DNA of 64,000 nt. Source: Macrostomum lignano. Taxonomy: Eukaryota. Positions 22,655 through 62,200 of this stretch are shown here, in pieces. The translations under genes were made by a program, and so were the position numbers. A model generated the notes under the pieces. That model was not told where the DNA came from. It worked only from the letters and a program-made list of their open reading frames with translations, and did no database searches. Location: positions 1 through 64,000 of the forward strand of contig NIVC01000045.1 in NCBI GenBank assembly GCA_002269645.1, given 5' to 3'. Each line of letters opens with the position of its first letter. The first letter of the stretch is position 1.

Positions 22655-22722
22655 CATAACAAGGACAGTTTTGCACTCGTATGAGCAACAGTAGAACTGA
22701 ATTCCCATCTACTCAAGAAACT

Positions 22723-23445
22723 ATGCTCAAAACTATTGCCTGCATTGTGAGCCTCGCCTCGCTCGTGCTTTGCACTGCCAGTAGAGTAACTCAGGTGTCC
22801 TACATTGGCTGCTATCTGGACAACGAGGCTAGAGATCTAAGAGGACTCACTGGAGTGAGCAAGATTGGTCAGTTCAGCATCGGCAGCCTCATGCTGAGCA
22901 GTGCCAGCATGACTCACGAGCTCTGCGGCAGCTTCTGCTCTCTGGGCGGCTTCCCGTACTTCGGTGTGCAGTCCGATGAGCAGTGCTTCTGCGGCACCTC
23001 CTACGGATCTCTGGGAGCTGCTAACACAAGCGACTGCAACAGGGCCTGTACTGGGAACGGTGCTCAGATTTGCGGAGGGACGTGGTGCAACTCAGTGTTC
23101 GCCTTGACCTACCCTGGTGAGTGCATGAGCTTAGTCTGAGCAGTCATGATTTTTCTAGTAGAAGTAGAATTTTTGATCAATTCTACTTCAAGTTTCCTGA
23201 ACCTTTTAGATAAAAAATATTTTGAGCAGTCGCAGATGCCCAACCAGACGGTTGTGTCCACCCAAAGTACCTACTGGACCAGCGCTGACAAAACCAAGGC
23301 CGAGTGCTTGATGATGTGCGAGGCTTCAGCTGACTGTCAGGCTGTGATTTTCTCAGGCCAGCAGCGCCTGTGCCACCTGCTGAGGTTCGCCTACCCGCCT
23401 GCCAGCTTGAGCAGCACTGATGGAGACTACTTTCTTCGTGGCTGA
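22723..23445 (+). CDS. Secreted WSC-domain + PAN/Apple-like protein, paralog 2
   Basis: Exons 22723-23116 and 23210-23445; same structure and intron position as paralog 1, high identity. Confidence 0.85.
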
Positions 23446-24775: not shown

Positions 24776-26592
24776 TTATTGCAGCAGATTACGTTGCTTA
24801 GCTGCAGCATCAAATCTTCTTTTTTGATTAGCGACTGTCTGCACCAAAAACCTCGTCAGTTCCCGATGGCCACCTCTAGCAGACGACTCCGCTGCCTCCA
24901 TGCAGCACCGGCTTCTCTTTTTTTGGTCTGCAATTGACTGCACTAGAAACTTCACAACTTCTAGCTTACCAAATCGTGCAACAAGCTTGGCTACCTTAAT
25001 GCAGCACTGATCTCTGCTTGTTTGGTCAGCGATTTTCTGCACCAGAAACTTCAACACGTCTAAATGATCCAAGAGTGCGGCAGACAGAGCTATATCCATG
25101 CAGCACTGATCTCTGTTTGTTTGGTCAACAACTGTCTGCACCAGAAACTTAACTACATCTAAATTATCCTGTTCTGAAGCACATTTCGCTGCTTCCATGC
25201 AGCACTGATCTCTGCTTGTTTCGTCAGCGACCGTCTGCACCAGGAACTTTAGTACTTCCCACTGACAATAAATTGCAGCAGACCTCGCTGCCTCCATGCA
25301 GCACTGATCTGTCTTTGCTTCGTCAGGAACTATCTGCACCAGAAACTTTACCACATTTAAATGACCCTTCTTTGAAGCACATTTTGCTGCTTCCATGCAG
25401 CACTGATCTCTGTTTGTTTGGTCAACAACTGTCTGCACCAGAAACTTAACTACATCTAAATTATCCTGTTCTGAAGCACATTTCGCTGCTTCCATGCAGC
25501 ACTGATCTCTGCTTGTTTCGTCAGCGACCGTCTGCACCAGGAACTTTAGTACTTCCCACTGACAATAAATTGCAGCAGACCTCGCTGCCTCCATGCAGCA
25601 CTGATCTGTCTTTGCTTCGTCAGGAACTATCTGCACCAGAAACTTTACCACATTTAAATGACCCTTCTTTGAAGCACATTTTGCTGCTTCCATGCAGCAC
25701 TGATCTCTGTTTGTTTGGTCAACGACTGTCTGCACCAGGAACTTCACGGCATCTATACGACCCCCGCTTCCAGCAAATTCCACTGCCTCCATGCAGCACT
25801 GATCTCTCTTTGCTTCGTCAGCAACTGCCTGCACCAGAAACTTAACTACATCTAAATGACCCTGTTGTGAAGCACATTTCGCTGCTTCCATGCAGCACTG
25901 ATCTTTCAAAAGTTGGTCAGAGACTGTCTGGACCAGTAACTTTGTCACTTCTAATTGACCCATTGCTGCAGCGGAATCCGCTTCCTTCGTACAGAACTGA
26001 TCTCTCTTTGCTTCGTCAGCGACTGTCTGCACGAGAAACTTCAGCACTTCCCACTGACCATTGGTTGTAGCAGAGGTCGCTGCCTGCACGCAGCACCTGT
26101 CCCTCAGAGTTGAATCAGCAACTGTCTGCACGAGAAACTTCAGCACTTCCCACTGACCGTTTCTTTCAGCAGATTTCGCTGCCTCTATGCAGCAATAATC
26201 TTTTACACTTTGGTCAGCAACTGTCTGCACCAGAAACTGCACCACTTCTAACTGACCAGAACTTGCTGCCGGTTTCGATGCGTCAATGCAACACTGATAT
26301 TTTTTTCTTTGGTCAGCCACTCTCTGCACCAGATACGTGACTACTTCCCACTCACTCTTCCTTGCAGCATGTTCCGCTGCCTCGGCGCAGCAGCGATCTT
26401 TTACACGTTGGTCAGCGACCCTCTGCACCAGAAACTTCACCACTTCCCACTGACCACGTTGAGCAGCTAGGCGCGAATTTCTAGCGCAAAATCGAGCTTT
26501 TCTTCTTTCCCCAGTCGAAGCCAGAAATGGGCTCTCAGTGCCCTGATGTTTCCACTGGTGACGGCTCCATGTCGGCTGATATTCTGACCCAT
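24776..26592 (-). CDS. Intronless protein of about 17 atypical 33-aa ankyrin-like repeats with an N-terminal MGQNIS motif; one frameshift near 26470
   Basis: ORF 26443-24776 has the repeat DQCCMEAAxxAxxxG(H/Q)(L/W)(D/E)VVKFLVQTVADxxxR. An upstream ATG at 26592 follows a cacacag acceptor and joins the ORF if one base is added at att[g]cgcgc, giving LEIARLAAQRGQWEVVKFLV. Confidence 0.75.
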
Positions 26593-27572: not shown

Positions 27573-28081
27573 TGTCACTGAGGCTACAAATGTATTGCTT
27601 AAAGTTTCTATGGATGAAATTAAGCCCCGAACGGGGAGGCAGTCATGCACGGAACCAAAGGCACTGCTCAGATATTAATTCCAATTTTGAAATTATGCAT
27701 AGTTCACATAAAACAGTAGCTATAAGCAGAGTTTTAACATGTGAAAGGTCTTTAGCTCTCTTACCTGTATATACTCTATCTGCTGTTTTTATGTTCGTTG
27801 AGGCCAAGCGCTAAAGAAACTTAACGGCGAGTTTTCTAATCGCTCTTATTTTTGTAGCTTTTGGCGGTGACCGACCGCTCCTATTTTAGAAAATGAAACT
27901 TTTCCGAAGTACAGTGAGAGGTAGCTGTGAGACTGCCAACCCCACTACCCCCCCCCCCTACGCACCGCATAGAAGAGCGAAAATGCGTGGCTGTTGTGGC
28001 TGCTCCCTCTCAAGTACTATTTGAGAACTGAGCTCATCAATTGTGCGTTCGCGAAGTGTTGCACATTTGCGAATGCAGTTC

Positions 28082-28148
28082 GTTAGATAGTTAGTTTGTT
28101 AGTTAGTTAGTAAGTTAGTTAGTCAGTTAGTTAGTCAGTTAGTTAGTC

Positions 28149-28188
<40 letters not shown>

Positions 28189-28256
28189 GGTTAGTTAGTT
28201 AGTTAGTGAGTTAGTTAGTTAGTTAGTTAGTCAGTTAGTTAGTCAGTTAGTTAGTC

Positions 28257-28299
<43 letters not shown>

Positions 28300-28440
28300 C
28301 AGTTAGTTAGTTAGTTAGTTAGTTAGTAAGTTAGTTAGTTAGTCAGTTAGTTAGTCAGTTAGTTAGTCAGTTAGTTAGTTAGTTAGTTAGTTAGTCAGTT
28401 AGTTAGTTAGTCAGTTAGTTAGTCAGTTAGTCAGTTAGTC

Positions 28441-28499
<59 letters not shown>

Positions 28500-28732
28500 G
28501 AGTTAGTTAGTTAGTTAGTTAGTCAGTTAGTTAGTCAGTTAGTTAGTCAGTTAGTTAGTTAGTTAGTTAGTTAGTCAGTTAGTTAGTTAGTCAGTTAGTT
28601 AGTTAGTTAGTTAGTGAGTAAGTTAGTTAGTTAGTCAGTTAGTTAGTCAGTTAGTTAGTCAGTTAGTTAGTTAGTTAGTTAGTTAGTCAGTTAGTTAGTT
28701 AGTCAGTTAGTTAGTCAGTTAGTCAGTTAGTC

Positions 28733-28787
<55 letters not shown>

Positions 28788-28832
28788 GAGTTAGTTAGTT
28801 AGTTAGTTAGTCAGTCAGTTAGTTAGTTAGTC

Positions 28833-28882
<50 letters not shown>

Positions 28883-28920
28883 CTGGTTAGTTAGTTAGTT
28901 AGTAAGTTGGTTAGTTAGTT
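28082..28920. repeat. (GTTA)n microsatellite with GTCA/GTGA variants
   Basis: Read directly. Confidence 0.97.
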
Positions 28921-35476: not shown

Positions 35477-40212
<4,736 letters not shown>

Positions 40213-41623: not shown

Positions 41624-42933
41624 TACGAGGGGCGATCAAAAAGTTCTGTCACTGCTTAATTTTTTCTGCACACGGGACTTCTCTCTAATTGATTTTGGTT
41701 GTTACCATAGACACATCATGTCCCCTACTTAACCATAACTTTTTTGAAGCCACTCTTGCTTAACTCAAGAATCTGCAGCATTTCTTCATCACCACCCTTG
41801 AGCAACTATGTCAATCTCAAGCGAAGCCATACGTGCCATCATCCATTATGAGTGGAGGCGTGGCACAGCAGCTAAGGATATTGAAGCCCGCTTGGTGATC
41901 AACATGGAGAGTCTGCACCGTCATATCGCACCATATATCATTCGCTGGATTCACAGTTTTGAAGGAGGCAAAGGGGACTTCGAAGACGAACCTCGCAGTG
42001 GCAGACCCAGGACCTCCAACCAGAGTGTTATCGACAGCGTCCAGAGCCTCCTTGACGAGGACACGCGAGTGACTATTGCTGAGATAGCAGAGGCCTGTGG
42101 TATCAGTTATGGCAGCGCGCAGTCCATCCTGACGGTCCAGCTGGGAATGTCGAAGGTTTGTGCCAGATGGGTGCCGAAACTCCTGACTGCGGAGATGCAG
42201 CGCAATCGGATGCAGGCGTGTCAGTACCTGCTCCACCTGATGCAGCACCGCCAAGATGAGTTTCTCGACTCTATCGTGACAGGCGATGAGTCGATGTTCT
42301 CCCTATACGAGCCGGAGACCAAAGCTCAAAGCATGCAGTGGAAGCGCCCCGATGAACCCACTCCGATGAAGGCCAAGACGGTGCCATCAATGAAGAAGCG
42401 GATGGGCACCATCTTCTGGGATCGGCAAGGGGTGCTGCTAATCGAGTGGCTGCCTGAGAAGCGGACGGTTACTGGAGACTCTTACGTTGCCACATTGCGC
42501 CAGCTGAAGGAAGCAATCAAGGAGAAGAGGCGTGGAAAGGTCACTAGGGGCATCCGGCTTCTCCATGACAACCGCCTCGGCGCACACCTGTCACAAGGCG
42601 CAGGCTGCTATCCGCGAGCTGGGGTTCGAGCAGCTCCCTCACCCTGCTCATTCGCCAGACCTGGCCCCATCGGACTTCTGGCTGTTTCCGGCGCTGAAAA
42701 ACTCGCTGCGAGGGCGCCACTGGGCTTCTGTGACTGCACTGGCATCCTCGGTGAACCAGTGGTGCAAACACCAGGATGAAGACTGGTACGCTGCGGGCAT
42801 TCAGAAGCTACCAGAGCGCTGGGCCAAGTGTGTCACTGCGTGGGAACTTTGTTGAGAAAGTGCAGGACGATTAACAGTTACATCGTTGTTTGTTTTGTTT
42901 CTAGTTAGGAAAGTGACAGAACTTTTTCGAGCG
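41624..42933 (+). mobile_element. Mariner (DD34D-type) transposon, decayed
   Basis: Left TIR tacgaggggcgatcaaaaagttctgtcact; right TIR agtgacagaactttttcgagcg is truncated. Transposase from 41808 has FEDEPRSGRP, WVPKLL, TGDES, LHDN, HSPDLAPSDFWLF, with frameshifts near 41900-41945, 42575 and 42835. Confidence 0.92.
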
Positions 42934-43640: not shown

Positions 43641-46600
43641 CTAATGCTGCTGCTGAACTGCAGCCAAGACCTGCTCTAGTTTTGATTCCATGCTCTTCAT
43701 TCGATGCCTCATTCTCTTTACTTTACCCTCAGTTTTCGCATGAAGCTGCTTGGTTTCAAATCTGTTCCGTTCGCTTTCCTGTAGGAGTAGGCGTACTTGC
43801 TGCTTCACGTCAACTGGGCCCTCGGAAGTCTGACCCCTCTCATTTCCTTCAGGCTTTGCATTCGTCGAATTATCATGCTTGTGGTAGTGTTCCTCTCCTT
43901 GGTGCTTTAAATCTTCAAGCATTTCTTGAACCTCCAATTTCAACTCCGACAGCTCGTTTGCTGTGTGCGCCTTTGCCACGTCGAAGTCGTTTCTGTTCCA
44001 CTGGGTGTCCCGTAGCAGGCGGGAGCGGCAGCGACGGAATTGAATCGCCTGGAACTCCAGAAACCGGTTGTAGTCTGGCGGGTAGAGCGACTTGTCTTGC
44101 CACCAATTCGCACCGTTTACCTGAAACGTTAAAAAAAATTATTCGCTGTCACGATTTTTAGGGCGAAGTACGATTATAAGCCTTACCTGGTCGTTGTCAC
44201 TTCGTCTCTCAGAGTCAGTGGCGCCAGAGTCAGTGGCGCCAGAGTCACCGGCGCCAGAGTCATCGACTGTATTTTGGTTGATACTGCAACTTCGCGATCT
44301 GCAGCTTTCGCAAAATTTCTTCCCAACGTACCGCAGAAAATAGTGCAAGTTCACCAGAAAAGAGAAAGGCGGTGGAATTGTAGGCAACTTATTGTACTCC
44401 TTCAGCATTTTAAAGAATTTCTTTCTCCAAATCCCGGTGGCTACGCCGTAAATTTGAGTGACTCGCAAATTGAAGAGCGCGATCAGCAGGTTCATCATCA
44501 CCACATTCACCAGGCCCATAAAAATGAATATTAGCAAGTAGTAGAACCACTCATATCCTTGTTTGATGGCGACTTCTCCGAGTTTTGTGCTGTTTGGAGA
44601 GGAACTGAGCTTGATTTGATCAAAGTTGCTAAACAGCAAGTTAAACGGCAGGGTGGCAGCCTGAATGAAGACTTCCCAACCGTAGTACGCATTGCCAACG
44701 TGAGCTGTGGGGGCCCAGGCAAAGGAAAACAACAGGCACGTGAAAAATACTCCAAAACAGCAAACAATCACAAGCAGAATTGTCAGAAAGGGCAACAAGT
44801 CGAAATAAATCAGTCTCCCCAGCATGCTGATCATTGGCCCGACGCTCTCAAAGTAGCTCAAAAACGTCACGGAGCGAAAGCAGAAAAGCACAAAGGACGT
44901 GCTTAGGACCATTTGACTTGGATAGGCTTCCTCCAATTTTAGACCATTACCGTAGTAGATCCATCTTGTTACCAGGCCAAGAAATAGAAAAAGAATAGCT
45001 AAAACATCAAAAACATTATTGCAGTCAGCTATGTATGCGGGAATTCGTAGCACGTATTTACCAATTCGGACTGCCTCTTTTGAAGATCTTAGTCTCCAGC
45101 TTTCAGCTATTTCTTGTGAGGCGAACGATAGAAAATAGGCTACTAAAATAGCATCCACCGCAGGCAGTGGAAAGGTAATCTGAAAGTTCAGAATGTACCA
45201 GCCGAAGAAACCAAGGAACCCAACGAAAGCTGTGGTATGGGTCCAAAACTTTGCTCTTGGAGAGTTAATATGGGAAATTTTTGGCCTGCACGGCAGGCAG
45301 TGATAATTGCCGCAACATTCTGAGCACAAAGAATGGGGATCTCTCCACTCATCTCTCGTCAGCGAGTAGATGCAGTCGGTGGCAAACAGATCTAGGCTAT
45401 CGGCTTCTTCCACTAGATCGAGAACGCTTCCGTATTTTATCTCTCTTATGTTCTCACCGGACACTGCGTACGGAAATTGTGGTCCAGAACAGTTCTTACT
45501 GCCTTCTTTGTTATTTTCTTGGGTGCTGCCGCCTGCAATAGTCATTTTTCCCTTTATATATCTGAACAACAGCTTGAGCTCCGATGGGCTAGCGTTGACA
45601 AAAAGTTCATTCAGTGCGTTCATTGCGATGTTTGTGACTTTCTTTTGCAACTGCAGCAGCTGCTCATGCTTGCCTTTTGCCTTAGCTCTCATCCTATTTA
45701 TTTCAGGGCCCAGCTGGATGAGCAAGCTGAGGCAGCACGGAATCAGCTCAAACTGTCTAGTCAGAATTAGCTCAGGCAGGATTTCGTCGCGGTCAAAAAA
45801 TGCGGCCAAGTCTAGAAGTGCCAGCTCTGAAGTGTCATCAACATGAGTCATTCGCTTGAACATGTTATGCCGAAGAAAACTTCTTTGGATACTTTCTTCA
45901 TTATCCAGTGTGCTGATGAAATGCTTCGTGAAGAATGCTTCTGTCTCCTGTGTTATCATGTTTAAGCTGAGTGCTGCACGAAATATCTTTCTGGAGTCCA
46001 TTTCCAGCGCTCTGATCAGAATCATTCTGTCTGTCTTTTGCTTCTTCGTACCCGAGTTTACAGATGTAGTTCCATAGTCATTCGTGATAGTCACGAGAGT
46101 GTTTTGTGCCGCTTGCCTGTCAGGGAGCTTTAGGGCTCGTTGTGGTGGATCTAGAAGGCGCCAAATGTCTGTCATTTTGATCTCCTTGAGATCTTTGTCC
46201 GTGATCTGGGAGTTTTCGCTGGCACTGTTCTTTAATTTTTTATTGTACTCCTTAACAGCTTGAATAAGATCATCGAAATTTCCGTTCTCAAAAGCTAAGT
46301 CAACGCATGATTTTTCTGACTGGGACTTGGACCAAAGCGTTAAATTGTTCTCAAGTAGAAACACAATATTTTGCCGATGGCCGGATGCGCAGGCAAAGTG
46401 CAAGCACGTATCTGCATCCTCAACGTTTTCGCAGGAGCGTGGCTTCACTTTTGACTTGATAAGGCTGTATTTGTCCTTGGTATTCAATAGAATCTTCATA
46501 GAACCAAGCATTACCTGCAGATTGTATTGGCCTGAGAACGTGTGAATTAGGTGAGCACCTGTTTTTGAATTGACTAAAATTTTTTTAAAGATCGTAGCAG

Positions 46601-48370
46601 CCTCATCGTCGGACGGAATCTTCTCTAACAGCTTGCATAGAACTGAAGTGTCTAGTTTTGTTGCGTGCAGGCAGTTCAAGTTGAGATTGTTTAGAGCCTC
46701 TGCGTTTACATTCTTACTAACAAGCAGTTTGAATCGATCCAAAATCAATTTCGCGTTTTTGTCATTCTTCAGAGTTGGCTCTGTTGAGCCAATTGCTGCT
46801 TTCATTTTTGTCTTCATCAGCGAATGCAGCAAAGTATTTCCTGCTGCGTCTGTGCGCTGGAGCTCCTCTTCTGGCATTTTGTTAATCAGGTGCTCCATAG
46901 TAAATCGTTGGGAATGCGAAACTTGGACAATCGGCTCTTCTTGATCCATTAGGTCGATTGCTAGATGAAGCACTGACTGATTTTTGTTGTTTCTCTTCCG
47001 CAGAATCTTTGAAGCTTCATTCGCCGCAAGTACTCCATATTGTTCAAACAGAATGCGAAAGAGCTCACTTTTGTCCTGCCTTTTGGCACCGATGTGGAAA
47101 ATCGTGTTGCCCGATTTATCGGCTATGAGAAGACCGCCGATTTGTTTTAAATGTTTATGAAGCAGCTCATTGACAGTTTGTAACTGACAGTTTTCGACAG
47201 CGTAATGTAAAACAGTTGATTTTTGTTTGTTTTGAACAAGTAGACATCCTGGATCGTTGGATATTTCAGCTTTTTTATCCGTTTGCTGGCTGAACTGACC
47301 ACTCCATTCACTCCATCGCTGCATGCGAGATGCACTTTTCAGACGTATTGTTTCTAAGATGGGTTTATTACTTGGCTCATCTGCATTTTTCTGACGCTTT
47401 GCTGCTACAACCCCTACAGCCTCAAGGAGTACATCATCTTGATCAGAGCACTGAGCAATAGCGTGCAGACACGTGTCGCCCTGTTTGTCTCTCAACTCGT
47501 ACCAACTTGGCACCCCTGACGACGCTTTTTTAATCAACTTGTGAGCCCTTTCCTTGCTGCATTTTTTAAGGGCCACATGTAGAACTGTTTCTCCATTTTT
47601 GTTGGCGGACTTTAGCTTAGCAGCATCTAAATTCATTTGTGTTTCTAAATGGCCAAGGGCATCGGCGGAATTTCTGGCAGCAAAATGGGCCACACCGTTG
47701 CCGTCGACATCTTTGTCCGTCAGCAAGTCACTGGCATTTTTAATGCCATCGATGATTTCCTCGAGAACACCTTCGTCTCGGCAGTGCTCTAACACTTTAT
47801 GCAACACAGTCTCATTTCTATTGTTTTTCCACTTCCAGCACATGGTGGAGGATTTTTCATTTATCTTGAGAATCGTTTTTGGGGATACCGAGTTTTTGGC
47901 AGCCCAGTGAGCACACGTGTCTCCATTTGAGTCTTTGAGACGCAATAGACTGAATGATTTTTGCGACTTGATTAGTTTTGTGAAGTTTTGATCCCAAGAC
48001 TCGGCGGAATGGTAGCGGGCCGATAGTTGTAGAGGTGTTATTTTGTCCTCGTCTGGAGTTGTTAGACAGTTTGGCCCGAACTGCTTAACTATTTCAGTGA
48101 GCAAACTTTCCCCATCCCTATGCTTGGCGGCATAGTGAGCAGCGGTCCTGAGGTGGTCATCTTGAAACTCCAGAAGTTTCAGTCCTGGAGTTTGGAGTCC
48201 TGGATATCGGAATTCTGGAGTCCTGGATATCGTAATAAAATCAAGAGCCGTCTCGAATTTTTTTTGCTTGCGTACAGAAGCAATTCTTCGCTTGGATCGG
48301 CACTGATCTCATCTTCGTCGCTATCATCGTAATCACTAGCCACTTGGTCAGCTTCCGCTTGATTCTCCAT
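43641..48370 (-). CDS. TRP cation channel with an N-terminal ankyrin array and TRPM-type transmembrane region
   Basis: Giant exon 48370-44187 (one -1 offset at the T8 run 48258-48265) plus exon 44120-43641. About 15 ANK motifs (TAAHYAA, TCAHWAA, TVLHVAL, TVLHYAV, TCLHFAC); S1 SPRAKFWTHTTAFVGFL; S4-S5 GPMISMLGRLIYFDLLPFL; S6 VNVVMMNLLIALF; TRP box WRKKFFKMLKEYNKLPTIPPPF; C-terminal coiled coil. Confidence 0.88.
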
Positions 48371-50462: not shown

Positions 50463-51107
50463 TGATCTATACCATTTAATGGCTGTCAGAATTAGTCAAA
50501 GTCTGCGTTATCATAATATTTAATCAAAAGCTGTGAAGGCTTCATGCAACTTACAGAATTTTTAGAATGTCGGAAGACTCAACAAAGTTCAATTTCTAAT
50601 TTTCAGCGCCTGAAGTGAGAATCTTTCTGGTTTACTGTCTTTATCAAGTCAGAGCAGCCTTCGCATTACATCTACTGTATATAGCTGAGTGAAAATGAAA
50701 CTCATATTCTGCCTCTGGGCGACTTAACCCCCAACCCACCACCTCATCTTTTAAGTGGAGTTAGAGTGCAATGAAATTCATTCTTCGCTGCTGAGTTATT
50801 TTTATAATACGAAACTGGACTAAATTTTTAGTCGCGGGTGCAAGACTTTGCGCTTCGGTGCTGTAATGCGGGCTCTGCTCAGATTTCTATCTTCTCTTCA
50901 TTTTTCTACGAGAATTAGTCTTAATTCTAAACAGCTCTATCTCTTTTCATGCTTCAGTGCTCTGGGCGTTTCTATACAGAGTGCCTGCTTGGATTAGAAA
51001 CTGTGTAGGCGTTCACTGCAGTGCTTTTTTGTCTAATTGTACATGTACGAGTATATTTATAAAGTTTGCGAGTCCGCTTCTGAGTTCTTTTAAGATAAGC
51101 ACTGCTT

Positions 51108-51158
51108 GTCTGTCTGTCTGCCTGTCTGTCTGTCTGTCTGTCTGCCTGTCTGTCTGTT

Positions 51159-51208
<50 letters not shown>

Positions 51209-51361
51209 CCTGTCTGTCTGTCTGTCTGCCTGTTTGTCTGTCTGCCAGTCTGTCTGTCTGTCTGCCTGTTTGTCTGTCTGCCAGTCTGTCTGTCTGTCTG
51301 CCTGTCTGTCTGTTTGTCTGTCTGCCAGTCTGCCTGTCTGTCTGTTTGTCTGTCTGCCAGT

Positions 51362-51392
<31 letters not shown>

Positions 51393-51471
51393 CCTGTCTG
51401 TCTGTTTGTCTGCCAGTCTGTCTGTCTGTCTGTCTGTCTGCCTGCCTGTCTGTCTGTTTGTCTGTCTGCCA

Positions 51472-51503
<32 letters not shown>

Positions 51504-51549
51504 GCTTGTCTGTCTGTCTGTCTGCCAGTCTGTCTGCCTGTCTGCCTGC

Positions 51550-51580
<31 letters not shown>

Positions 51581-51585
51581 CCAGT

Positions 51586-51616
<31 letters not shown>

Positions 51617-51742
51617 CCTGTCTGTCTGTTTGTCTGTCTGCCAGTCTGTCTGTCTGTCTGCCTGTCTGTCTGTTTGTCTGTCTGCCAGTCTGTCTGTCTG
51701 TCTGTCTGTCTGCCTGTCTGCCTGCCTTAGTGTCTGTCTGTC
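51108..51742. repeat. (TCTG)n microsatellite
   Basis: Read directly. Confidence 0.97.
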
Positions 51743-53286: not shown

Positions 53287-56200
53287 ATGTCCGGCCTGGA
53301 TCCCAAAGACCCAGACTTCAAGTACCTTGGCGTCGACAGGAAAGCCCTGCTGAAGGAGCTCGGCAATGTCACCTTCGATTCTAAGAAAGTTTGCTGGGTG
53401 CCCGACGAGAAGGAGGGATACGTCAAGGGTGACGTGATCTCGCGAGAGGGCGGGAAAGTCACGGTTAAGACGGAGAAAGGAGAGGTGAGAAGTTTATCAA
53501 TTATTAAATTTATGTGAGCATTTGTAGCATGAGTGGTTGTACGGTTTTAGGCTGCACGACGGAGTGACTGATCAGTGTCTGAGTGGCAGCGAAAGTAAGT
53601 GATTAAGTGACTGAGTGGATAGATAGGCTGACGGACTAGCAGGTGCAGTTAGTGACTGAGTGGCATTGTGAGTGCTGCAGTGAGTGACTGAGTGGCATTG
53701 TGAGTGCGGCAGTGAGTGACTGAGTGGCATTGTGACTGCGGCAGTGAGTGACTGAGTGGCATTGTGAGTGCGGCAGTGAGTGACTGAGTGGCATTGTGAG
53801 TGCTGCAGTGAGTGACTGAGTGACATTGTGACTGCGGCAGTGAGTGACTGAGTGGCATTGTGACTGCGGCAGTGAGTGATTGAGTGACATTGTGTCTCTG
53901 GTAATAAGAGACTGAGTGTGTGACTTAGCGACATTGTGACTGCAGCACTGGGGGACAGAGTGACATTGTGACTGCGGCAGTGAGTGACTGAGTGACATTT
54001 TGACTGCTTCAGATAGTACCTGAGTGACTTGGTTAACATTAGGAGTAAACACGAATCAACAATAAAATTTGGCCCCAACCAGGAGAAGACCCTGAAGGAG
54101 GACGATTTGCAGCAGATGAACCCGCCAAAATTCGAGCTGTACGAAGACATGGCCAACCTGACCTTCTTGAACGACGCCTCTGTGCTGCACAACTTGAAGC
54201 AGCGCTACATTAAAATGCTCATCTACGTGAGTTGCTTTGTGTATGGGATAGTTAATTGGGATTTAATGAGATAAACATGCAGATGAACATCAAAAGTCGT
54301 GGAGAATAAGGTAGATGAGTCATAGAATTTGGATATTGTCCTGAGTCATCGATTCACTGTATGACGAGAGTTTTGTTGTGTGGCGTCTGAATTATATCCA
54401 TGTCACAGAAAATAGAGCTGCAAGAGAATAGAGGAGTCACAAAGGAGGATAGAGAATCACAGAGGAGGATAGAGAGTCCCAGAGGAGGATAGAGTCATAG
54501 ATAGAGGAGAATAGATAGTCACAGAGGAAGATAGATAGTCATAAAGGAGAATAGAGAGTCATAGAGGAGAATAGAGAGTCAAAAAGGAAAATAGAGAGTC
54601 ACTGAGGAGAGCAAAGAGTCACAGAGGAGAACAAAGAATCACAGAAGAAAATATAGTCGCAGAAGAGAACAAAGAGTCACAGAGGAGAACAAAGAATCAC
54701 AGAAGAGAATATAGTCGCAGAAGAGAACAAAGAGTCACAGAGGAGAACAAAGAATCACAGAAGAGAATATAGTCGCAGAAGAGAACAAAGAGTCACAGAG
54801 GAGAACAAAGAATCACAGAAGAGAATATAGTCGCAGAAGAGAACAAAGAGTCACAGAGGAGAACAAAGAATCACAGAAGAGAATATAGTCGCAGAAGAGA
54901 ACAAAGAGTCACAGAGGAGAACAAAGAATCACAGAAGAGAATATAGTCGCAGAAGAGAACAAAGAGTCACAGAGGAGAACAAAGAGTCACAGAGGAGAAC
55001 AAAGAGTCACAGAGGAGAACAAAGAGTCACAGAATAGGATGGAAGCAACCTCGTTAAAAAGGGGGGCTTCCCATTTGTCACTTTTGCCTTGATAAAGTTT
55101 TAATGAAACCAGTTGCAATAACTCTAATCTAACAACGGTATCTCAATCTCAGACCTACTCGGGCCTGTTCTGCGTGGTGGTGAACCCGTACAAGCGGCTG
55201 CCCATCTACACCAACAGTGTGGTGCTGAAGTACAAAGGCAAACGCAAAACTGAGATGCCACCGCACGCGTTCGCCATCTCTGACAATGCCTACTCTAACA
55301 TGCTGCAGGGTGAGTTGGAATCCTGCGCCTTAGCAACAGTAACCTCATAAAAATGTTATCGATAAAGTATGTCACTCATGTTTTGTCTACCTTCATTTTA
55401 GATCGCGAGAACCAGTCTGTTTTGATCACGTATGTGGCTGTTTTAATTATTTCAATTTTGTTAATATTTTTAATATAAACTATTTAAATGATCTTTGTTT
55501 GTTTAGTTTGATTCAGGCTTCTGTTTAGCAAGGATACTTTTAACTTTAATAGAAAATGCACATGCTCATTTAAAAATTCCATAACGTCTTGTCACTCTTC
55601 TAATTATTTACTCATGTTTTGCTTTCTTCCAATACGAATCACTTCCAAGATTTGTCACTTCTGTACTTGTCACTCCCTTACTTGTCACTTTCTTAATTGT
55701 CACTCCCTTACTTGTCACTCCCTTACTTGTCACTCCCTTACTTGTCACTCCCTTACTTGTCACTCCCTTACTTGTCACTCCCTTACTTGTCACTTTCTTA
55801 ATTGTCACCCCCTTACTTGTCACTCCCTTACTTGTCACTCCCTTACTTGTCACTCCCTTAATTGTCACTCCCTTACTTGTCACTTTCTTAATTGTCACTC
55901 CCTTACTTGTCACCCCCTTACTTGTCACTCCCTTACTTGTCACTCCCTTAATTGTCACTTTCTTAATTGTCACTTTCTTACTTGTCACCCCCTTACTTGT
56001 CACTCCCTTAATTGTCACTTTCTTACTTGTCACCCCCTTACTTGTCACTCCCTTAATTGTCACCCCTTACTTTTCACTCCCTTAATTGTCACCCCCTTAC
56101 TTGTCACTCCCTTAATTGTCACCCCTTACTTGTCACTCCCTTACTTGTCACTCCCTTACTTGTCACTCACTTAATTGTCACTCCCTTACTTGTCACTTTC

Positions 56201-59200
56201 TTAATTGTCACCCCCTTACTTGTCACTCCCTTAATTGTCACTTTCTTACTTGTCACCCCCTTACTTGTCACTCCCTTACTTGTCACTTTCTTAATTGTCA
56301 CCCCTTACTTTTCACTCCCTTAATTGTCACCCCCTTACTTGTCACTCCCTTAATTGTCACCCCCTTACTTGTCACTCCCTTACTTGTCACTCCCTTACTT
56401 GTCACTCACTTAATTGTCACTCCCTTACTTGTCACTTTCTTAATTGTCACTCCCTTACTTGTCACCCCCTTACTTGTCACTCCCTTACTTGTCACTCCCT
56501 TAATTGTCACTTTCTTAATTGTCACTCCCTTACTTGTCACCCCCTTACTTGTCACTCCCTTAATTGTCACTCCCTTACTTGTCACCCCCTTACTTGTCAC
56601 TCCCTTTATTGTCACCCCTTACTTTTCACTCCCTTAATTGTCACCCCCTTACTTGTCACTCCCTTAATTGTCACCCCCTTACTTGTCACTCCCTTAATTG
56701 TCACTCCCTTACTTGTCACTTCCTTAATTGTCACTCCCGTACTTGTCACTCCTACATTTGTTATTCTCACAGACTTACCACTCTCATAATTTTCACCCCA
56801 AATACTTGTCACTTCCACATTTGTCACTTCCATAGACTTGTCACTCAGTGATAATTTAGACACTTTGCATTTTCGCTATTTGGCATCGCATTGTTAACAC
56901 AGCTACATGCACTAGCAGTCGTGACTATCCGCTTCGCTGTCATCTTATAAATGCTTTTTAGATGCTTTCTGGCTGTTTGAATTTAAGCTACTATTTAGTA
57001 GAGCTGTGGCATTTTATTGCAAAATATAAGCCCAACCGTCTACTCCCTTAAAAACGACTCTCAGCGGCGAGAGCGGAGCCGGTAAAACCGAAAACACAAA
57101 GAAGGTCATCTCTTACTTCGCCCAACTGACCGCCCTCTCCGGAGGCAAGGAAGCCGCTGAAGCAGTCGACAACAAGAAGGTTCGATGATGAAGGATGCTG
57201 CAGTCTTCATTGATTCTTTTTTTATTTGTGTGACCAAATCCCTAATACGTTCTGATATTCTATGAACGCCAGTTAAATATCAATGGTAACAATCAATATA
57301 CGCTACTAAGTAGAATGTGCCGCATTTTCCTGCATGATTTGACTTTGCCATAAATATTGATTTTTTTCTAAGAAAACACGCTATACAAATGAATCGCGTA
57401 CATTTTAACAAATCATTTCTCTGGCAGGGCACACTAGAGGAGCAGATTGTGCAGGCCAACCCTGTGCTGGAAGCGTACGGCAACGCCAAAACTGTCAGGA
57501 ACAACAACTCGTCTCGATTTGTAAGTTCAAAACTGCCGCTAGCATTTTTTAACTTTCTTATTTAAAATCATGGAGCTTTTCAAGCAAGAAAAGTATATCA
57601 AATTTCAGGGAAAATTTATTAGAATTCACTTTGGTCCGGCTGGCAAGATTGCTGGAGCTGATATCGAGTTTTGTAAGTATTTTTGGCTGCAGCATGGCTT
57701 GTATGTTTATGAGTGAGTTCATGAGTGAGTTCATGAGTGAGTTCATGAGTGAGTTCATGAGTGAGTTCATAGAGTTCATGAGTGAGTTCATAGAGTTCAT
57801 GAGTGAGTTCATAGAGTTCATGAGTGAGTTAATGAGTGAGTTCATGAGTGAGTTCATGAGTGAGTTCATAGAGTTCATGAGTGAGTTCATAGAGTTCATG
57901 AGTGAGTTAATGAGTGAGTTCATAGAGTTCATGAGTGAGTTTATAGAGTTCATGAGTGAGTTAATGAGTGAGTTCATGAGTGAATTAATAGGGGGGTTAA
58001 TGAGTGAGTTAATAGGGGGGTTAATGAGTGAGTTCATGAGTGAGTTAATAGGGGGGTTAATGAGTGAGTTCATGAGTGAGTTAATAGGGGGGTTAATGAG
58101 TGAGTTCATAAGGGAGTTCATGAGTGAGTTCATGAGTAAAATCATAGGTGAGTTCTTGAATGAGTTCATGAGTGAGTTCATAAGTGAGTTCATCACTAAT
58201 CACTCAGTTCATGACTAACAGTTGTGTCAATGCCTGAATTCATGAGGGACTTCATGAGTGAGGTCACGAGTGATTATACTACAATAGTGAGTTCATAAAT
58301 GAGTACATGATTGAGTTCATTTGTTGGTTCATTAGTCAGTTCAGGGGTTCATAAGTTCATGATTCAATGTGTGAGCTCACGAGCATAATTTTTCATAAGT
58401 GAATGTGTGAGTGCAGAGTTCATAGGCTCATCGGTGAATTGATGAGTTTATCTGTTCATGAGCAGTGGGTGAAGAGGCGAGTGCAGTGATGCGTGTATTC
58501 TGTTCTAACTCTTTGTTAATATACAATTCTCAGACCTGCTCGAGAAGTCTCGCGTCACCTCCCAGATGGGCGGGGAGCGCAACTACCACATCTTCTACCA
58601 GCTGTTGTCTGATTACGCCAAGCAGTGGCACGACAAGCTGCTGGTGGCCCCCGACCCCGGCCTCTACTCGTTTATCAACCAGGGCGAGCTGCAAATCGAC
58701 GGAGTGGACGACTCCGAGGAGATGAAGTTCACCGACGAGGCCTTCGACATTCTGGGCTTCTCAGCCGTGGAAAAGAACGGCATGTACAAGGCCACGTGCG
58801 CCATTATGAACATGGGCGAGATGAAGTTCAAGCAGAGACCGCGCGAAGAGCAAGCAGAAACCGATGGAACCGCCGAAGCTGAGAAGGTCGCCTTCCTGTT
58901 GGGCGTCAACGCCAAGGACCTGCTGCAGGCAATTCTGAAGCCGAAGGTCAAAGTTGGAAACGATTACGTAACCAAGGGACAGTCACTGGAGCAGGTAAGA
59001 TAAAGCTACAAATTAGTTTCAAAATGCTCAGTGCCTGCGAGTTCATCATAACGTTCATCGAAACGCTCAAAAACTAGGTGAACTTCTCAATGCAAGCCCT
59101 GGCCAAGTCGCTCTACCACCGCATGTTCGCCTGGCTGGTGGCCAGAGTCAACCAGACCCTGGACACCAAGGCTAAGCGTCAGTTCTTCATCGGCGTGCTG

Positions 59201-62200
59201 GACATTGCCGGCTTTGAGATCTTCGATTTCAACGGGTTCGAGCAGATCTGCATCAACTACACCAACGAGCGGCTGCAGCAGTTCTTCAACCACCACATGT
59301 TTGTGCTGGAGCAGGAGGAGTACAAGAAGGAGGCCATCGACTGGGAGTTTATCGACTTCGGCATGGACCTTGCCGCCTGCATCGAGCTGATCGAGAAGCC
59401 AATGGGCATCCTGTCCATCCTGGAGGAAGAGTGCATGTTCCCCAAGGCCTCGGACACCACATTCAAGAACAAGCTGTACGACAACCATCTGGGAAAGTCG
59501 CCGAACTTTGGCAAGCCGAAGCCGCCGAAGCCTGGCAAGGCGGAGGCGCACTTCGAGCTGCACCACTACGCCGGCACCGTGGGCTACAACATCACCGGCT
59601 GGCTGGAGCGGAACAAAGACCCGCTGAACGAGTCTGTTATTGAAGTTCTGAGCGCCAGCAAGGAGCACATGGTTGCGACGTTTTTCCCGCCAGTTAGTGG
59701 TAAGAATAATAGTGCTTTGATGTCATCATTTTCATAAACATCCCGGATGTTCTTGTGGTAACATTACCCGTGGCTTTTTCTTAGACGGAGGCGACGCAAA
59801 ATCCGGCAAGAAGCGCAAGGGCGGCGGCATGCAAACCATCTCTGCTACGCACAGGGTAAGTAGAGTTAAAAACGCGGCCCATTTGTCCTCTACGACAGTA
59901 GGACTCAAAGCAAACCAACTAAACAATGTAACAAACCAAACAGGAGTCGCTGAACAAGCTGATGAAAAATCTGCACAGCACTTCGCCCAACTTCATTCGT
60001 TGCATTGTGCCGAACGAGTTCAAACAATCAGGCGTGGTGGACGCTCACCTGGTGCTCCACCAGCTTCACTGCAACGGCGTGCTGGAGGGCATCCGTATCT
60101 GTCGGAAGGGTTTCCCAAATCGCCTCATCTACACCGAGTTCAAGCAGCGGTAAGTGACATGAAACATGAGATATACAGAAAGAATGAAATCGAGTTCTTA
60201 AGATCCCCAGCATCATGTTAACATCCATTTAAACATTTTAGCTACTCGATCCTGGCTCCAAACGCTATTCCGGAGGGCTTCGTCGAAGGTAAAGTGGTCA
60301 GTGGCAACATTCTCGAGGCTGTGCAACTTGACAAGCAGCAGTACCGTCTGGGCACCACGAAGGTCTTCTTCAAGGCCGGTGTGCTGGCCGAACTCGAGGA
60401 CATGCGCGATGAGAAGCTGAGCCGCATCATCGCGCTGTTCCAGGCCCAGATCCGTGGCTACGTGATGCGCAAGAAGCACAAGAAGCTGCAAGACCAGCGC
60501 ACTGCTCTCAGCATCATCCAGCGCAACGTGCGCAAGCACCTGCAGCTGAAGAACTGGGAATGGTGGCGCCTGTACCTCAAGGTTAAGCCAATGCTTAACG
60601 TTGCTCGCCAGGAGGAGGAGATGAAGAAGGCTGCCGAGGAGCTCGCCAAGATGAAGGAAGAATTCGAGAAGATGGAGAAGCTGAAGAAGGAGCTCGAGGA
60701 GCAAAATGTCACCCTGCTGCAGCAAAAGAATGACATCTTCCTCCAGCTGCAGGCTGAGCAGGACACTCTTGCTGACGCCGAGGAAAAAATTGAAAGCCTC
60801 ATCAAACAGAAGGCAGACTTTGAGTCGCAGCTCAAGGAGCTCGAAGACCGTCTCCTTGACGAAGAAGACGCTGCAAACGAACTTGAAGGCGTTAAAAAGA
60901 AGATGGAGGGCGAGATGGACGAGCTGAAAAAGGATATCGATGATCTCGAGCAGAGCTTGCAGAAGTCTGAGCAGGAAAAGCAGAGCAAGGAGAACCAGAT
61001 CAAGACACTTCAGGAGGAGATGGCCCGACAGGATGAGTCCCTCGCCAAGCTGCAGAAGGAGAAGAAGGCCCATGAGGAGACCATCAAGCAGACGCAAGAG
61101 GCTCTTGCTGCCGAAGAGGAGAAAGTGAAGAACCTGAATAAGCTGAAGCAAAAGCTTGAGCAGAACCTGGACGAGCTGGAGGACCAACTTGAGCGCGAGA
61201 AGAAAGTTCGCGGAGATGTTGAAAAAGCGAAGCGCAAAGTCGAGGGCGACTTGAAAATGACTCAAGAAACGGTGGACGATCTGGAGCGGGTGAAGCGCGA
61301 CATGGAGGAGCAGATCAAGCGCAAGGACGCCGAGCTAAACAGTTTGCACAACAAAGTTGAAGACGAGCAGGGCATCATTGCTCAGCTGCAGCGAAAGATC
61401 AAGGAGCTGCAGGCTCGCATTCAGGTAAGAAGCCTAAATAATTAAATATCGTACTCGCAAATCACCGTAACATTAGCAATCAACTTATCATCGTTGCCTG
61501 GTAATTCAGGAACTCGAAGAGGAGCTCGAAGCCGAACGCCAGGCTCGTTCAAAGGCTGAGAAACAGCGTCAGCAGGTGGAGGCCGAACTTGACGACGTTG
61601 CTGACAGGCTGGAAGAGCAGGGCGGCGCCACCGTGGCTCAGCAGGAGTTGAACAAGAAGCGCGAAGCTGAGCTGCTGAAGCTGCGCCGGGAGATGGAGGA
61701 CAACGTGCTCCAACACGAGCAGATGGTTCAGCAGCTGCGCAAGAAGCAACAGGACGCGGTCAACGAGCTGTCTGAACAAGTCGACCAGCTACAGAAGGCC
61801 AAGGGCAAGACGGAGAAGGAGAAAACGCAGTTCAAAGCCGAGGTTGAAGACCTGCACGCTCAGTTGGAACACGTCAACAAGTCCAAGGCTGCCGCTGAGA
61901 AGAATAGCAAGGGCTTGGAGGCTCAGCTGAGTGATCTGCAGGTATGCTGAAATACTCTGAGAACCGCTAACCGTTATAAAACTACGTCATTTATTCATAA
62001 ATTTTTTGTCTACAGGGCCGTCTGGACGAAGCCACTCGCCAGATTGGCGACCTGCAGTCGCAGAAGAACCGAGCTCAACAGGAGGGCGGCGACCTCGGTC
62101 GACGACTCGAAGAGGCCGAGGCTCAGCTGGCTCAGCTGACCAAGGCGAAGCAGCAGCTGACGCAGCAACTGGATGAGGCCAGGTTGAGAATCAATTATTT

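What the first reader, a model, noticed from the sequence alone, without database searches (positions are those of the whole stretch)
43641..48370. Chimeric TRP channel: long ankyrin array fused to a TRPM-type body
The N-terminal 700 aa or so hold about 15 ankyrin repeats, as in TRPA/TRPN. What follows resembles TRPM rather than TRPA: MHR3-like ILIRALEMDSRKIFRAAL, MHR4-like ALLDLAAFFDRDE, pre-S1 VLDLVEEADSLDLFATDCIYSLTRDEW, S1 SPRAKFW, TRP box WRKKFFKMLKEYNKLPTIPPPF (cf. WKFQRY..I.EY..RP.LPPP) and a C-terminal coiled coil. Canonical TRPMs have no ankyrin repeats and use an MHR1/2 (SLOG) domain at this position, which is absent here. About 4.2 kb of coding sequence in one exon suggests retroposition or domain-shuffling origin. 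Flatworm TRPMs are anthelmintic targets, so a new ANK-TRPM subclass would matter.
Basis: partly seen in the sequence, partly recalled or inferred. Interest (0 to 1): 0.8.

Follow-up and report, generated by a model that had tools for sequence, protein, structure and literature searches.

The report
Flatworm ankyrin-bearing TRPM-like channel gene
This is a Macrostomum flatworm gene for a TRPM-like cation channel whose usual N-terminal melastatin (SLOG) domain is replaced by a long ankyrin-repeat array; the design is real, but it was already described for the parasite drug target TRPM_MCLZ, so this is a divergent free-living relative and not a new channel class.

Summary
The observation largely holds. 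On the minus strand, 48370..43641 encodes a conceptual 1554-aa protein with about 13-16 ankyrin-like repeats, a helical linker, six TM helices, a TRPM-type TRP helix and a helical tail. Two corrections apply. The ATG joins the main frame only after a +1 fix in an A8 run (48265-48258). A 66-nt GT..AG intron (44186-44121) separates a 4.2-kb exon from a 3' exon.

The channel body is TRPM-type. PDB profile hits are all TRPM (E 1e-61 to 1e-48), and the top 50 Foldseek hits for a confident AF2 model (pLDDT 83.7) are all TRPM. No SLOG/MHR1-2 domain is present.

The "new ANK-TRPM subclass" reading is not supported. This architecture (ankyrin repeats instead of SLOG, TRPM-like body, few exons) is published for the schistosome meclonazepam target TRPM_MCLZ, whose clade its authors call "TRPM-like". 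I identified TRPM_MCLZ orthologues by their published residue numbers. The window protein's linker is profile-homologous to theirs (E 1e-7).

The window gene belongs to a strongly diverged, Macrostomum lignano-only expansion of at least 15 paralogue groups. These share the two-exon structure, so recent retroposition is unlikely. Deep phylogeny is unresolved. Interest is moderate to low.

The parts
48368..48370 (-). Putative start codon (MENQAEADQ...). An AG (…ttctcag|GTT) 33 nt upstream at ~48404 coincides with the first residue of the public model P0007 and may be a splice or trans-splice acceptor; this is an inference.
48258..48265 (-). A8 homopolymer where the ATG frame and the long ORF frame differ by one base. 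It is either an assembly indel or a real frameshift.
   Evidence: P0007 (97.8% identical over 228 aa) reads ...LLLYASKKKFETALDFI... through it without a gap.
46245..48152 (-). Ankyrin-repeat array (conceptual aa ~74-709). It holds about 13-16 repeats, many degenerate, with a ~65-aa non-repeat insert around aa 315-380.
   Evidence: Pfam Ank_2/Ank_4/Ank/Ank_3/Ank_5; ankyrin-HMM and motif scan. The last two repeats are modelled at pLDDT above 90.
45264..46172 (-). Helical cytosolic linker (MHR3/4-like) plus pre-S1 segment (conceptual aa 734-1036).
   Evidence: AF2 model is confident here. Foldseek aligns 635-850 columns to TRPM chains, including an N-terminally truncated TRPM4 (8rcr_A, TMt 0.64). 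hhalign to the TRPM_MCLZ linker gives E 1e-7 over 271 columns. No direct sequence hit to TRPM.
44859..45260 (-). S1-S4 voltage-sensor-like domain. The four positions that bind Ca2+ in TRPM2/4/5/8 are E1087, E1090 (Q in TRPM), N1119 and D1122 (conceptual numbering). The position of Sm.TRPM_MCLZ H946 is Thr here.
44388..44840 (-). S4-S5 linker, S5, pore helix (…LPFNLLFSNFD…), S6 and TRP helix (WRKKFFKMLKEY).
44358..44429 (-). TRP box through the PPPF motif (WRKKFFKMLKEYNKLPTIPPPFSF).
   Evidence: aligned to TRPM2 [23 protein letters not shown]
44121..44186 (-). 66-nt intron (GTAAGG…TTTCAG) containing the in-frame TAA at 44141-44139.
   Evidence: The junction DNDQ|VNGANWW matches P0007, and paralogues continue collinearly.
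43644..44120 (-). Exon 2. It encodes the conserved WW..YP..Y.RFL.FQA.QFRR motif and a charged helical tail with a possible coiled coil at the last ~30 aa.
43641..43643 (-). Stop codon TAG.

Best explanation
The locus encodes a subunit of a tetrameric, non-selective cation channel of the flatworm 'TRPM-like' group. The published prototype of that group is TRPM_MCLZ.

From N to C terminus the protein has a short acidic segment and about 13-16 ankyrin repeats in place of the melastatin SLOG (MHR1/2) domain. These are followed by a helical linker with the fold of TRPM MHR3/4, a pre-S1 segment and an S1-S4 voltage-sensor-like domain. That domain keeps acidic or polar residues at the four positions that bind Ca2+ in TRPM2/4/5/8. 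Next come the S5-pore-S6 region, a TRPM-type TRP helix with PPPF, and a helical tail that probably helps tetramer assembly.

Shown here: the gene model, the domain order, the TRPM-type fold and sequence of the body, the absence of SLOG, membership of a Macrostomum lignano-only expansion, and profile-level linker homology to TRPM_MCLZ orthologues.

Inferred, not shown: it gates like other TRPMs, through the S1-S4 cavity (ligand and/or Ca2+) coupled by the TRP helix to S6. The ankyrin array would serve as a cytosolic docking or regulatory platform. The many paralogues would give the free-living worm a diversified sensory or excitable-cell channel repertoire.

The window copy may carry a 1-bp frameshift near its 5' end. 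This is most likely a homopolymer assembly error.
For: Gene model:
- ORF, intron and frameshift are established.
- The conceptual 1554-aa protein aligns end to end with paralogue P0156 (52.8% identity, residues 22-1554).

Organism:
- All close hits are Macrostomum lignano, and P0007 is 98% identical.

TRPM-type body:
- phmmer against PDB gives TRPM2 at 4.7e-21.
- A profile of ankyrin-type flatworm channels against PDB returns only TRPM among the best 60 hits, E 4e-61 to 6e-48, and NOMPC is no longer among them.
- AF2 with an 80-sequence alignment gives pLDDT 83.7 and pTM 0.81. The Foldseek top 50 are all TRPM, with 635-850 aligned columns.

No SLOG.

Same architecture elsewhere in flatworms:
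- Ankyrin plus Ion_trans occurs in Opisthorchis, Dicrocoelium, Fasciolopsis and Schistocephalus, and in Schistosoma, Fasciola, Taenia and Echinococcus, among others.
- M. lignano clade C has ankyrin repeats, PF25508 (the TRPM MHR3/4 domain, above Pfam's threshold) and Ion_trans, without SLOG.

Identification of the parasite clade as TRPM_MCLZ:
- H946/Y1038, Y940 and Y944 sit at exactly the published positions (PMC10788528).
- The Opisthorchis model with two channel domains matches the published exon 3a/3b duplication.

Linker homology:
- Window clade against TRPM_MCLZ clade: probability 94%, E 1e-7.
- TRPM_MCLZ clade against canonical MHR3/4: E 8e-13.
- Clade C against canonical MHR3/4: E 6e-19.

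Other support:
- The unrooted TM tree puts all 31 ankyrin-type sequences on one side, with 67% bootstrap.
- Few exons is a family trait (PMC11731825).
- The Ca2+-site positions are conserved.
Against: - The window clade is very diverged. Its TM profile scores ankyrin-type relatives only slightly above canonical TRPMs (about 130 against 120 bits).
- Its linker gives no direct significant match to canonical TRPM or to Pfam PF25508.
- When the tree is rooted with a single TRPA1-like outgroup, the three ankyrin-type clades are not recovered as one group, and deep nodes have 5-24% support.
- Trees are neighbour-joining only, because no maximum-likelihood tool was available.
- No TRPS, TRPC or TRPN sequences were in the tree.
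- The N-terminal ankyrin array could not be modelled (single-sequence AF2, pLDDT 40).
- Function, ion selectivity, Ca2+ dependence and expression are all untested.
- The frameshift could be real and this copy a pseudogene.
Confidence: 0.8

Rival explanations
1. Convergent architecture. The Macrostomum clade containing the window gene acquired its ankyrin array independently of TRPM_MCLZ, for example by separate domain shuffling onto a TRPM body. It would then be a distinct ankyrin-TRPM subclass.
For: The TRPA1-rooted NJ tree does not recover the ankyrin-type clades as one group, and deep nodes have 5-24% support. The window clade is extremely diverged, with no PF25508 hit, and it carries more repeats than TRPM_MCLZ-type proteins appear to.
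Against: - The linker, which is independent of the TM domain, is significantly closer to the TRPM_MCLZ clade (E 1e-7, 271 columns) than to canonical TRPM (E 0.02).
- The unrooted tree groups all ankyrin-type sequences at 67%.
- The domain order, the lack of SLOG and the few-exon gene plan are all shared (PMC11731825).
- All ankyrin-type relatives whose source could be traced come from one phylum.
Confidence: 0.1
2. It is really a TRPN/NOMPC-, TRPA- or TRPC-type channel. These families normally carry ankyrin arrays, and the TRPM resemblance would be superficial.
For: A long N-terminal ankyrin array is typical of TRPN and TRPA. In the single-sequence PDB search, NOMPC scored 45 bits, on a par with TRPM4.
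Against: - The NOMPC match covers only S4 to TRP, whereas TRPM2 and TRPM3 match from pre-S1 to TRP at 70-77 bits.
- With a family profile, all 60 best hits are TRPM at 167-210 bits.
- The Foldseek top 50 are all TRPM over nearly the whole 790-aa model.
- Sister clades hit the TRPM-specific Pfam domain PF25508.
- The TRP helix plus PPPF is TRPM-like.
Confidence: 0.03
3. The window copy is a recently inactivated pseudogene and not a working channel gene. This is compatible with the family assignment.
For: The ATG frame and the long ORF are out of register at an A8 run. No full-length public protein model for this exact gene was returned, only the fragmentary P0007. The surroundings are rich in repeats and transposons.
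Against: There is a single 1-bp discrepancy, it lies in a homopolymer, and 4.1 kb of otherwise uninterrupted frame follows it. The splice sites are intact, and residues invariant across the family are conserved. The near-identical copy behind P0007 reads through the site. Homopolymer indels are a common assembly error (general knowledge).
Confidence: 0.2

Closest known systems
TRPM_MCLZ (Schistosoma mansoni Smp_333650 and its orthologues in trematodes and cestodes), the meclonazepam-activated 'TRPM-like' channel (Park et al. 2024 JBC, PMC10788528; Sprague, Rohr and Marchant 2024, PMC11731825; Rohr et al. 2026, PMC12861061)
   Same: - N-terminal ankyrin(-like) repeats in place of MHR1/2-SLOG.
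- A TRPM-like linker, S1-S6, and TRP helix with PPPF.
- No C-terminal enzyme domain.
- Very few exons (3, against 2 here).
- Flatworm-restricted as far as I could trace sources.
- Linker profile homology at E 1e-7.
   Different: - It is not an orthologue. TM identity is about 24%, and the gene sits in a separate Macrostomum-only clade.
- The window protein is longer (1554 against ~1380 aa), with more recognisable repeats.
- The S4 residue that governs meclonazepam sensitivity (H946) is Thr here.
- The filter region reads F-S-N-F-D where TRPM_MCLZ has F-E-V.
- In TRPM_MCLZ the channel domain has its own exon; here the ankyrin array and the channel share one exon.
Canonical TRPM channels (TRPM2, TRPM3, TRPM4 and others)
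   Same: The fold and sequence of the S1-S6 region, the TRP helix and the MHR3/4-type linker. The four VSLD Ca2+-site positions are conserved in kind.
   Different: There is no SLOG/MHR1-2 domain, and a long canonical ankyrin array takes its place. There is no Nudix or kinase domain. The linker is too diverged for direct sequence detection.
M. lignano clade C ankyrin-TRPM proteins (for example PAA51132.1/P0063 and PAA64798.1/P0070)
   Same: Same species and same ankyrin-linker-channel order.
   Different: Clade C keeps a recognisable PF25508 MHR3/4 domain and a near-canonical TRP box (WQFERY). It is closer to TRPM_MCLZ and to canonical TRPM than the window clade is.
TRPN (NOMPC) and TRPA1
   Same: A long N-terminal ankyrin array ahead of a six-TM TRP channel.
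   Different: The channel body is not of their type. The repeat number is about 15, against 29 in NOMPC.

Membership tests
Canonical TRPM (melastatin) | N-terminal MHR1/2 (SLOG, Pfam LSDAT_euk) | tested here: not met
   No LSDAT hit at E<=1. A jackhmmer SLOG profile that finds 50 other proteins does not find it.
Canonical TRPM (melastatin) | MHR3/MHR4 helical linker before S1 | tested here: inconclusive
   Fold-level match to TRPM chains across the whole model, and a transitive profile chain from the window clade to TRPM_MCLZ to canonical TRPM. There is no direct significant sequence match.
Canonical TRPM (melastatin) | TRPM-type S1-S6 and TRP helix followed by a PPPF-type motif | tested here: met
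   TRPM2 at E 4.7e-21; family profile against TRPMs at E 1e-61 to 1e-48.
Canonical TRPM (melastatin) | Absence of canonical N-terminal ankyrin repeats | tested here: not met
   Pfam ankyrin families are significant, with about 13-16 repeats.
Canonical TRPM (melastatin) | C-terminal tetramerising coiled coil | tested here: inconclusive
   No TRPM_tetra hit. The heptad pattern in the last 28 aa is reached by 8% of shuffles.
Flatworm 'TRPM-like' group (TRPM_MCLZ type) | Ankyrin repeats replace SLOG ahead of a TRPM-like channel body | tested here: met
   definition from PMC11731825 section 3.1 and PMC12861061 Fig. 1 legend.
Flatworm 'TRPM-like' group (TRPM_MCLZ type) | Homology outside the TM domain (linker) to TRPM_MCLZ orthologues | tested here: met
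   hhalign probability 94%, E 1e-7, 271 columns. The orthologues were identified by published residues H946, Y1038, Y940 and Y944.
Flatworm 'TRPM-like' group (TRPM_MCLZ type) | Groups phylogenetically with TRPM_MCLZ, apart from SLOG-type TRPMs | tested here: inconclusive
   The unrooted NJ tree gives 67% support for one ankyrin-type cluster. This is not recovered with a single TRPA1-like outgroup, where deep nodes have 5-24% support.
Flatworm 'TRPM-like' group (TRPM_MCLZ type) | Few-exon gene structure | tested here: met
   Two coding exons here and in paralogue locus L001; three in Sm.TRPM_MCLZ (PMC11731825).
TRPM_MCLZ orthologue (strict sense) | One-to-one orthology, and a His/Tyr/Phe-type S4 residue that governs meclonazepam response | tested here: not met
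   It belongs to a separate Macrostomum-only clade, has about 24% TM identity, and has Thr at the S4 position. Drug response is not testable with these tools.
TRPN / TRPA / TRPC | Channel body (S1 to TRP) most similar to that family | tested here: not met
   None of these families appears among the best 60 profile hits or the top 50 Foldseek hits. NOMPC gives only a partial S4-TRP match.
TRPS (soromelastatin, ced-11-like) | SLOG (and often Nudix) domains, no ankyrin repeats, and a sister position to TRPM | tested here: not met
   No SLOG or Nudix domain, and ankyrin repeats are present. Features are taken from PMC7306681. No named TRPS sequence was available for the tree, so the phylogenetic part was not tested.

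The most novel reading that the evidence does not exclude
The flatworm ankyrin-type 'TRPM-like' channels, including this Macrostomum expansion, may be an old lineage that kept the ancestral ankyrin array of group-1 TRP channels and never acquired the SLOG domain, and not TRPMs that swapped SLOG for ankyrin repeats. That would contradict the published inference of an ankyrin-free, SLOG-linked TRPM/TRPS ancestor (PMC7306681). It would also make the degenerate ankyrin-like MHR3 of canonical TRPMs a remnant of such an array.

A weaker variant is that the >=15 paralogue groups in a free-living, transgenesis-ready flatworm form a diversified sensory receptor family whose native stimuli could be found.
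Probability: 0.15. Interest if true: 0.6.

Novelty: new variant of a known kind. Interest (0 to 1): 0.35.

Why it matters
TRPM_MCLZ is a validated anthelmintic target, but its native activator and physiological role are unknown.

This work shows that a free-living, genetically tractable flatworm carries a large, diverged family with the same unusual architecture, plus a closer clade C. That offers a place to study what ankyrin-type TRPM-like channels normally do and what the ankyrin array contributes.

It also adds sequence diversity for mapping the S1-S4 ligand pocket, and it bears on how TRPM N-termini evolved. It does not establish a new TRP class.

Tried and rejected
- Single-sequence AF2 of the ankyrin region failed (pLDDT 40), so the repeat count rests on HMM and motif evidence.
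- A consensus-ankyrin phmmer scan was too insensitive for these repeats. I replaced it with an iterated ankyrin HMM.
- The search for homologous proteins returned few true relatives. The first two searches gave 9 and 21 hits, and the second did not even return its own query members. The exhaustive representative search was far more useful.
- A direct profile search of the pre-S1 linker against PDB found nothing, and hhalign against canonical TRPM found only a weak pre-S1 segment.
- I looked in paper supplements for outgroup sequences and found no FASTA held. Only one outgroup, a Clytia TRPA1-like protein that turned up by chance, could be used. Rooting with it left the deep nodes unresolved.
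- I considered and rejected assignment to TRPN, TRPA or TRPC.
- I considered and rejected recent retroposition, because of the intron and the shared two-exon plan.
- No canonical AATAAA follows the stop codon closely; I did not pursue this.


Full report
**1. What is in the sequence**

On the minus strand one frame is open for 1389 codons, from 48308 to 44142. It stops at a TAA (44141-44139) and then continues open in the same frame for 165 codons, ending at a TAG at 43643-43641.

The two frames meet at an A8 run (48265-48258). Adding one A gives ...ELLLYASKKKFETALDFI..., which is exactly what the 98%-identical public Macrostomum lignano model P0007 reads, with no gap.

The in-frame TAA lies inside a 66-nt GTAAGG...TTTCAG intron (44186-44121). 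The spliced junction DNDQ|VNGANWW is also what P0007 reads, and all paralogues continue collinearly across it.

The conceptual product is 1554 aa. It aligns end to end (residues 22-1554, 52.8% identity) with a full-length M. lignano paralogue, P0156. The finding's coordinates are therefore exact. However, the gene has two coding exons and, in this assembly, a one-base frame discrepancy in a homopolymer.

**2. Organism and family size**

Every close relative traced to a source is from Macrostomum lignano. All are annotated only as 'ANK_REP_REGION' or 'Ion_trans domain-containing' or hypothetical proteins.

I ran an exhaustive HMMER search of 1.84 billion representatives with a profile of the non-ankyrin part. 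About 30 representatives, each no more than 50% identical to the others, matched the whole profile at 250-1260 bits. After these there is a sharp drop to proteins that match only the transmembrane part at 155 bits or less. The window gene thus belongs to a large, species- or genus-restricted expansion of at least 15 distinct full-length paralogue groups.

**3. Ankyrin array**

Pfam reports only ankyrin families in the first ~700 aa (Ank_2 E 5.4e-17, five stretches).

An ankyrin HMM iterated on canonical repeats gives 12 hits along residues 79-699. About six of these are individually significant. TPLH-like motifs add three or four more. A ~65-aa non-repeat insert lies near residues 315-380.

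'About 15' repeats is therefore a fair count, but many are degenerate. A single-sequence AlphaFold run of this region failed (pLDDT 40). The last two repeats are confidently modelled in the second run.

**4. Channel body**

- *Single sequence against solved structures.* The best matches are TRPM2 (E 4.7e-21) and TRPM3 (6e-19), running from pre-S1 through the TRP helix. The alignment pairs SPRAKFW with SPQVKFY and WRKKFFKMLKEYNKLPTIPPPF with [22 protein letters not shown]. NOMPC matches only S4 to TRP, at 45 bits.
- *Family profile.* With a profile built from ankyrin-type flatworm channels, all 60 best PDB hits are TRPMs (E 4e-61 to 6e-48).
- *Structure.* AlphaFold2 on residues 600-1389 of the long frame, with an 80-sequence alignment, gave pLDDT 83.7 and pTM 0.81. 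The model has six TM helices, a pore helix and a long S6-TRP helix.
- *Fold search.* The Foldseek top 50 PDB hits are all TRPM2/3/4/5/8, with 635-850 aligned columns. One is an N-terminally truncated TRPM4 chain that aligns almost completely (8rcr_A, TMt 0.64). This means the ~300 residues before S1 superpose on MHR3/4.
- *SLOG.* No SLOG domain is present.
- *Ca2+ site.* The four VSLD positions that bind Ca2+ in TRPM2/4/5/8 are E, E, N and D here. They are invariant or nearly so across the ankyrin-type clades.

**5. The MHR3/MHR4 claim**

The pre-S1 linker of the window clade, taken alone, has no significant match in the PDB sequence set. It also has no significant hhalign match to canonical TRPM MHR3/4 (E 0.02).

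It does match the linker of the parasite clade at probability 94%, E 1e-7, over 271 columns. The core pairing is LLDLAAFFDRDEILPELILTRQFELIPCCL with LFLAIICGRFRVVEQLIRMRQFDVLPAAVL. The pre-S1 pairing is SVLDLVEEADSLDLFATDCIYSLTRDEW with SLIDLCAKAKCTNVLSLSCCQRLLDERW.

The parasite clade in turn matches canonical MHR3/4 at E 8e-13. A second M. lignano clade (C) matches canonical MHR3/4 at E 6e-19 and hits Pfam PF25508 ('TRPM2-like domain', which lies between SLOG and S1 in a shark TRPM4) above Pfam's own threshold.

The MHR4-like and pre-S1 assignments are therefore supported transitively and by fold. The specific 'MHR3-like' motif is supported by global fold only.

**6. Is the architecture new? 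No.**

Ankyrin plus a TRPM-like channel without SLOG is found in Opisthorchis, Dicrocoelium, Fasciolopsis, Fasciola, Calicophoron, Schistosoma, Trichobilharzia, Heterobilharzia, Schistocephalus, Sparganum, Taenia, Echinococcus, Mesocestoides and Anoplocephala. These proteins are about 1380 aa long.

They are the orthologues of TRPM_MCLZ:
- The Schistosoma haematobium-group protein has His at 946 and Tyr at 1038.
- The S. turkestanicum protein has Tyr at 940.
- The S. mekongi protein has Tyr at 944, the position reported for the related S. japonicum orthologue.
- These are exactly the residue numbers in the functional paper (PMC10788528).
- The Opisthorchis model with two channel domains corresponds to the published exon 3a/3b duplication.

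The literature states that TRPM_MCLZ 'lacks the NH2-terminal MHR1/2 or SLOG domain', carries ankyrin-like repeats instead, and is encoded by three exons. It adds that its clade 'could be referred to as TRPM-like' (PMC11731825; PMC12861061). The TRPM_MCLZ papers I read deal with parasites and do not mention Macrostomum.

**7. Phylogeny**

A neighbour-joining tree of the TM domain (108 sequences, 307 columns, 200 bootstraps) puts all 31 ankyrin-type sequences on one side of a split from 77 SLOG-type or other TRPM-like sequences, with 67% support. The ankyrin-type side has three sub-clades:
- A, which is M. lignano only and includes the window gene (99%).
- B, the TRPM_MCLZ orthologues plus a few unnamed sequences.
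- C, which is M. lignano only (100%).

I then added more TRPM_MCLZ orthologues and the one outgroup I could obtain, a Clytia TRPA1-like protein. Deep nodes fell to 5-24% support, and A no longer joined B and C. Long-branch effects are likely.

The relation among A, B, C and canonical TRPM is therefore unresolved by the tree. The linker profile comparisons favour A grouping with B (section 5).

**8. Gene structure and the retroposition idea**

The paralogue encoded at L001 has the same plan: a 3612-nt first exon, a 944-nt intron and a 426-nt last exon. TRPM_MCLZ has three exons, against 36 for TRPM_PZQ (PMC11731825).

Few introns is thus an old property of this group. It is not evidence for a recent retroposition at this locus. 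An ancient retroposition cannot be excluded.

**9. Mechanism**

Shown: the domain order and a TRPM-type fold.

Inferred from TRPM structural biology and from TRPM_MCLZ function (a cation current in HEK293 cells, with a ligand pocket in the S1-S4 cavity; PMC10788528): the protein forms tetrameric cation channels gated through the S1-S4 cavity and the TRP helix. These may be Ca2+-dependent. The ankyrin array would be a cytosolic regulatory or docking module, and the tail would assist assembly.

The meclonazepam-determining S4 residue is Thr here, so sensitivity to that drug is not expected.

**10. Verdict**

The interpretation as a chimeric ankyrin-TRPM channel is right. The claim of a new subclass is not, because the architecture is published. 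What is new is a large, highly diverged expansion in a free-living flatworm. I rate it a new variant of a known kind, with interest 0.35.

Noticed in passing
window 24776-26443 (-): A 555-aa ORF made of about 16 near-identical 33-aa ankyrin-like repeats (…CCMEAAKSA..G.LEVVKFLVQTVAD…). It is encoded by a 99-bp tandem repeat (13.5 copies, with a 297-bp higher-order unit at 87% identity). Pfam Ank_4 gives E 3e-45. It looks like a recently amplified repeat-protein gene or exon.
   Followed up: partly
window 41808-42855 (+): A mariner-type transposase remnant (Pfam Transposase_1 E 1.6e-22, HTH_32). Its reading frame is split between two overlapping ORFs, and it lies ~800 bp downstream of the channel gene's stop codon.
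   Followed up: partly
window 60294-61445 (+): A 383-aa ORF matching the myosin tail (Pfam Myosin_tail_1 E 8.5e-40). This is probably an exon of a myosin heavy chain gene.
   Followed up: no
window 19151-19591 (+) and 22681-23139 (+): Two paralogous ORFs, each with a hydrophobic N-terminus and a conserved cysteine pattern (YIGCY…CFCGTSYG…). They look like duplicated secreted WSC-like domain proteins. This was not tested against any library.
   Followed up: no
window ~48404 (-): The public model P0007 begins exactly after …ttctcag|GTTAGATCT, 33 nt upstream of the ATG. This could be a cis- or spliced-leader trans-splice acceptor.
   Followed up: no
L001 18262-20248: A partial second copy (82-86% identical) of the 3' part of the paralogue P0012/P0160, lying ~4 kb downstream of that gene. 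It indicates local segmental duplication in this family.
   Followed up: no
window, many sites (e.g. 28077-28920, 38590-38954, 51107-51742, 55652-56752): The window is dense in micro- and minisatellite arrays: (AGTT)n, (TCTA)n, (TGTC)n and 15-26-bp units with up to 70 copies. Base composition swings between 30% and 54% GC.
   Followed up: no
proteins P0062, P0069, P0090, P0106, P0118 and others: A well-supported clade (99%) of 12 TRPM-like proteins with ~800-900-aa N-termini. My scans detected neither SLOG nor ankyrin repeats in them, and Pfam on P0062 found only Ion_trans and a weak PF25508 hit. Their identity, possibly TRPS-like, was not established.
   Followed up: partly
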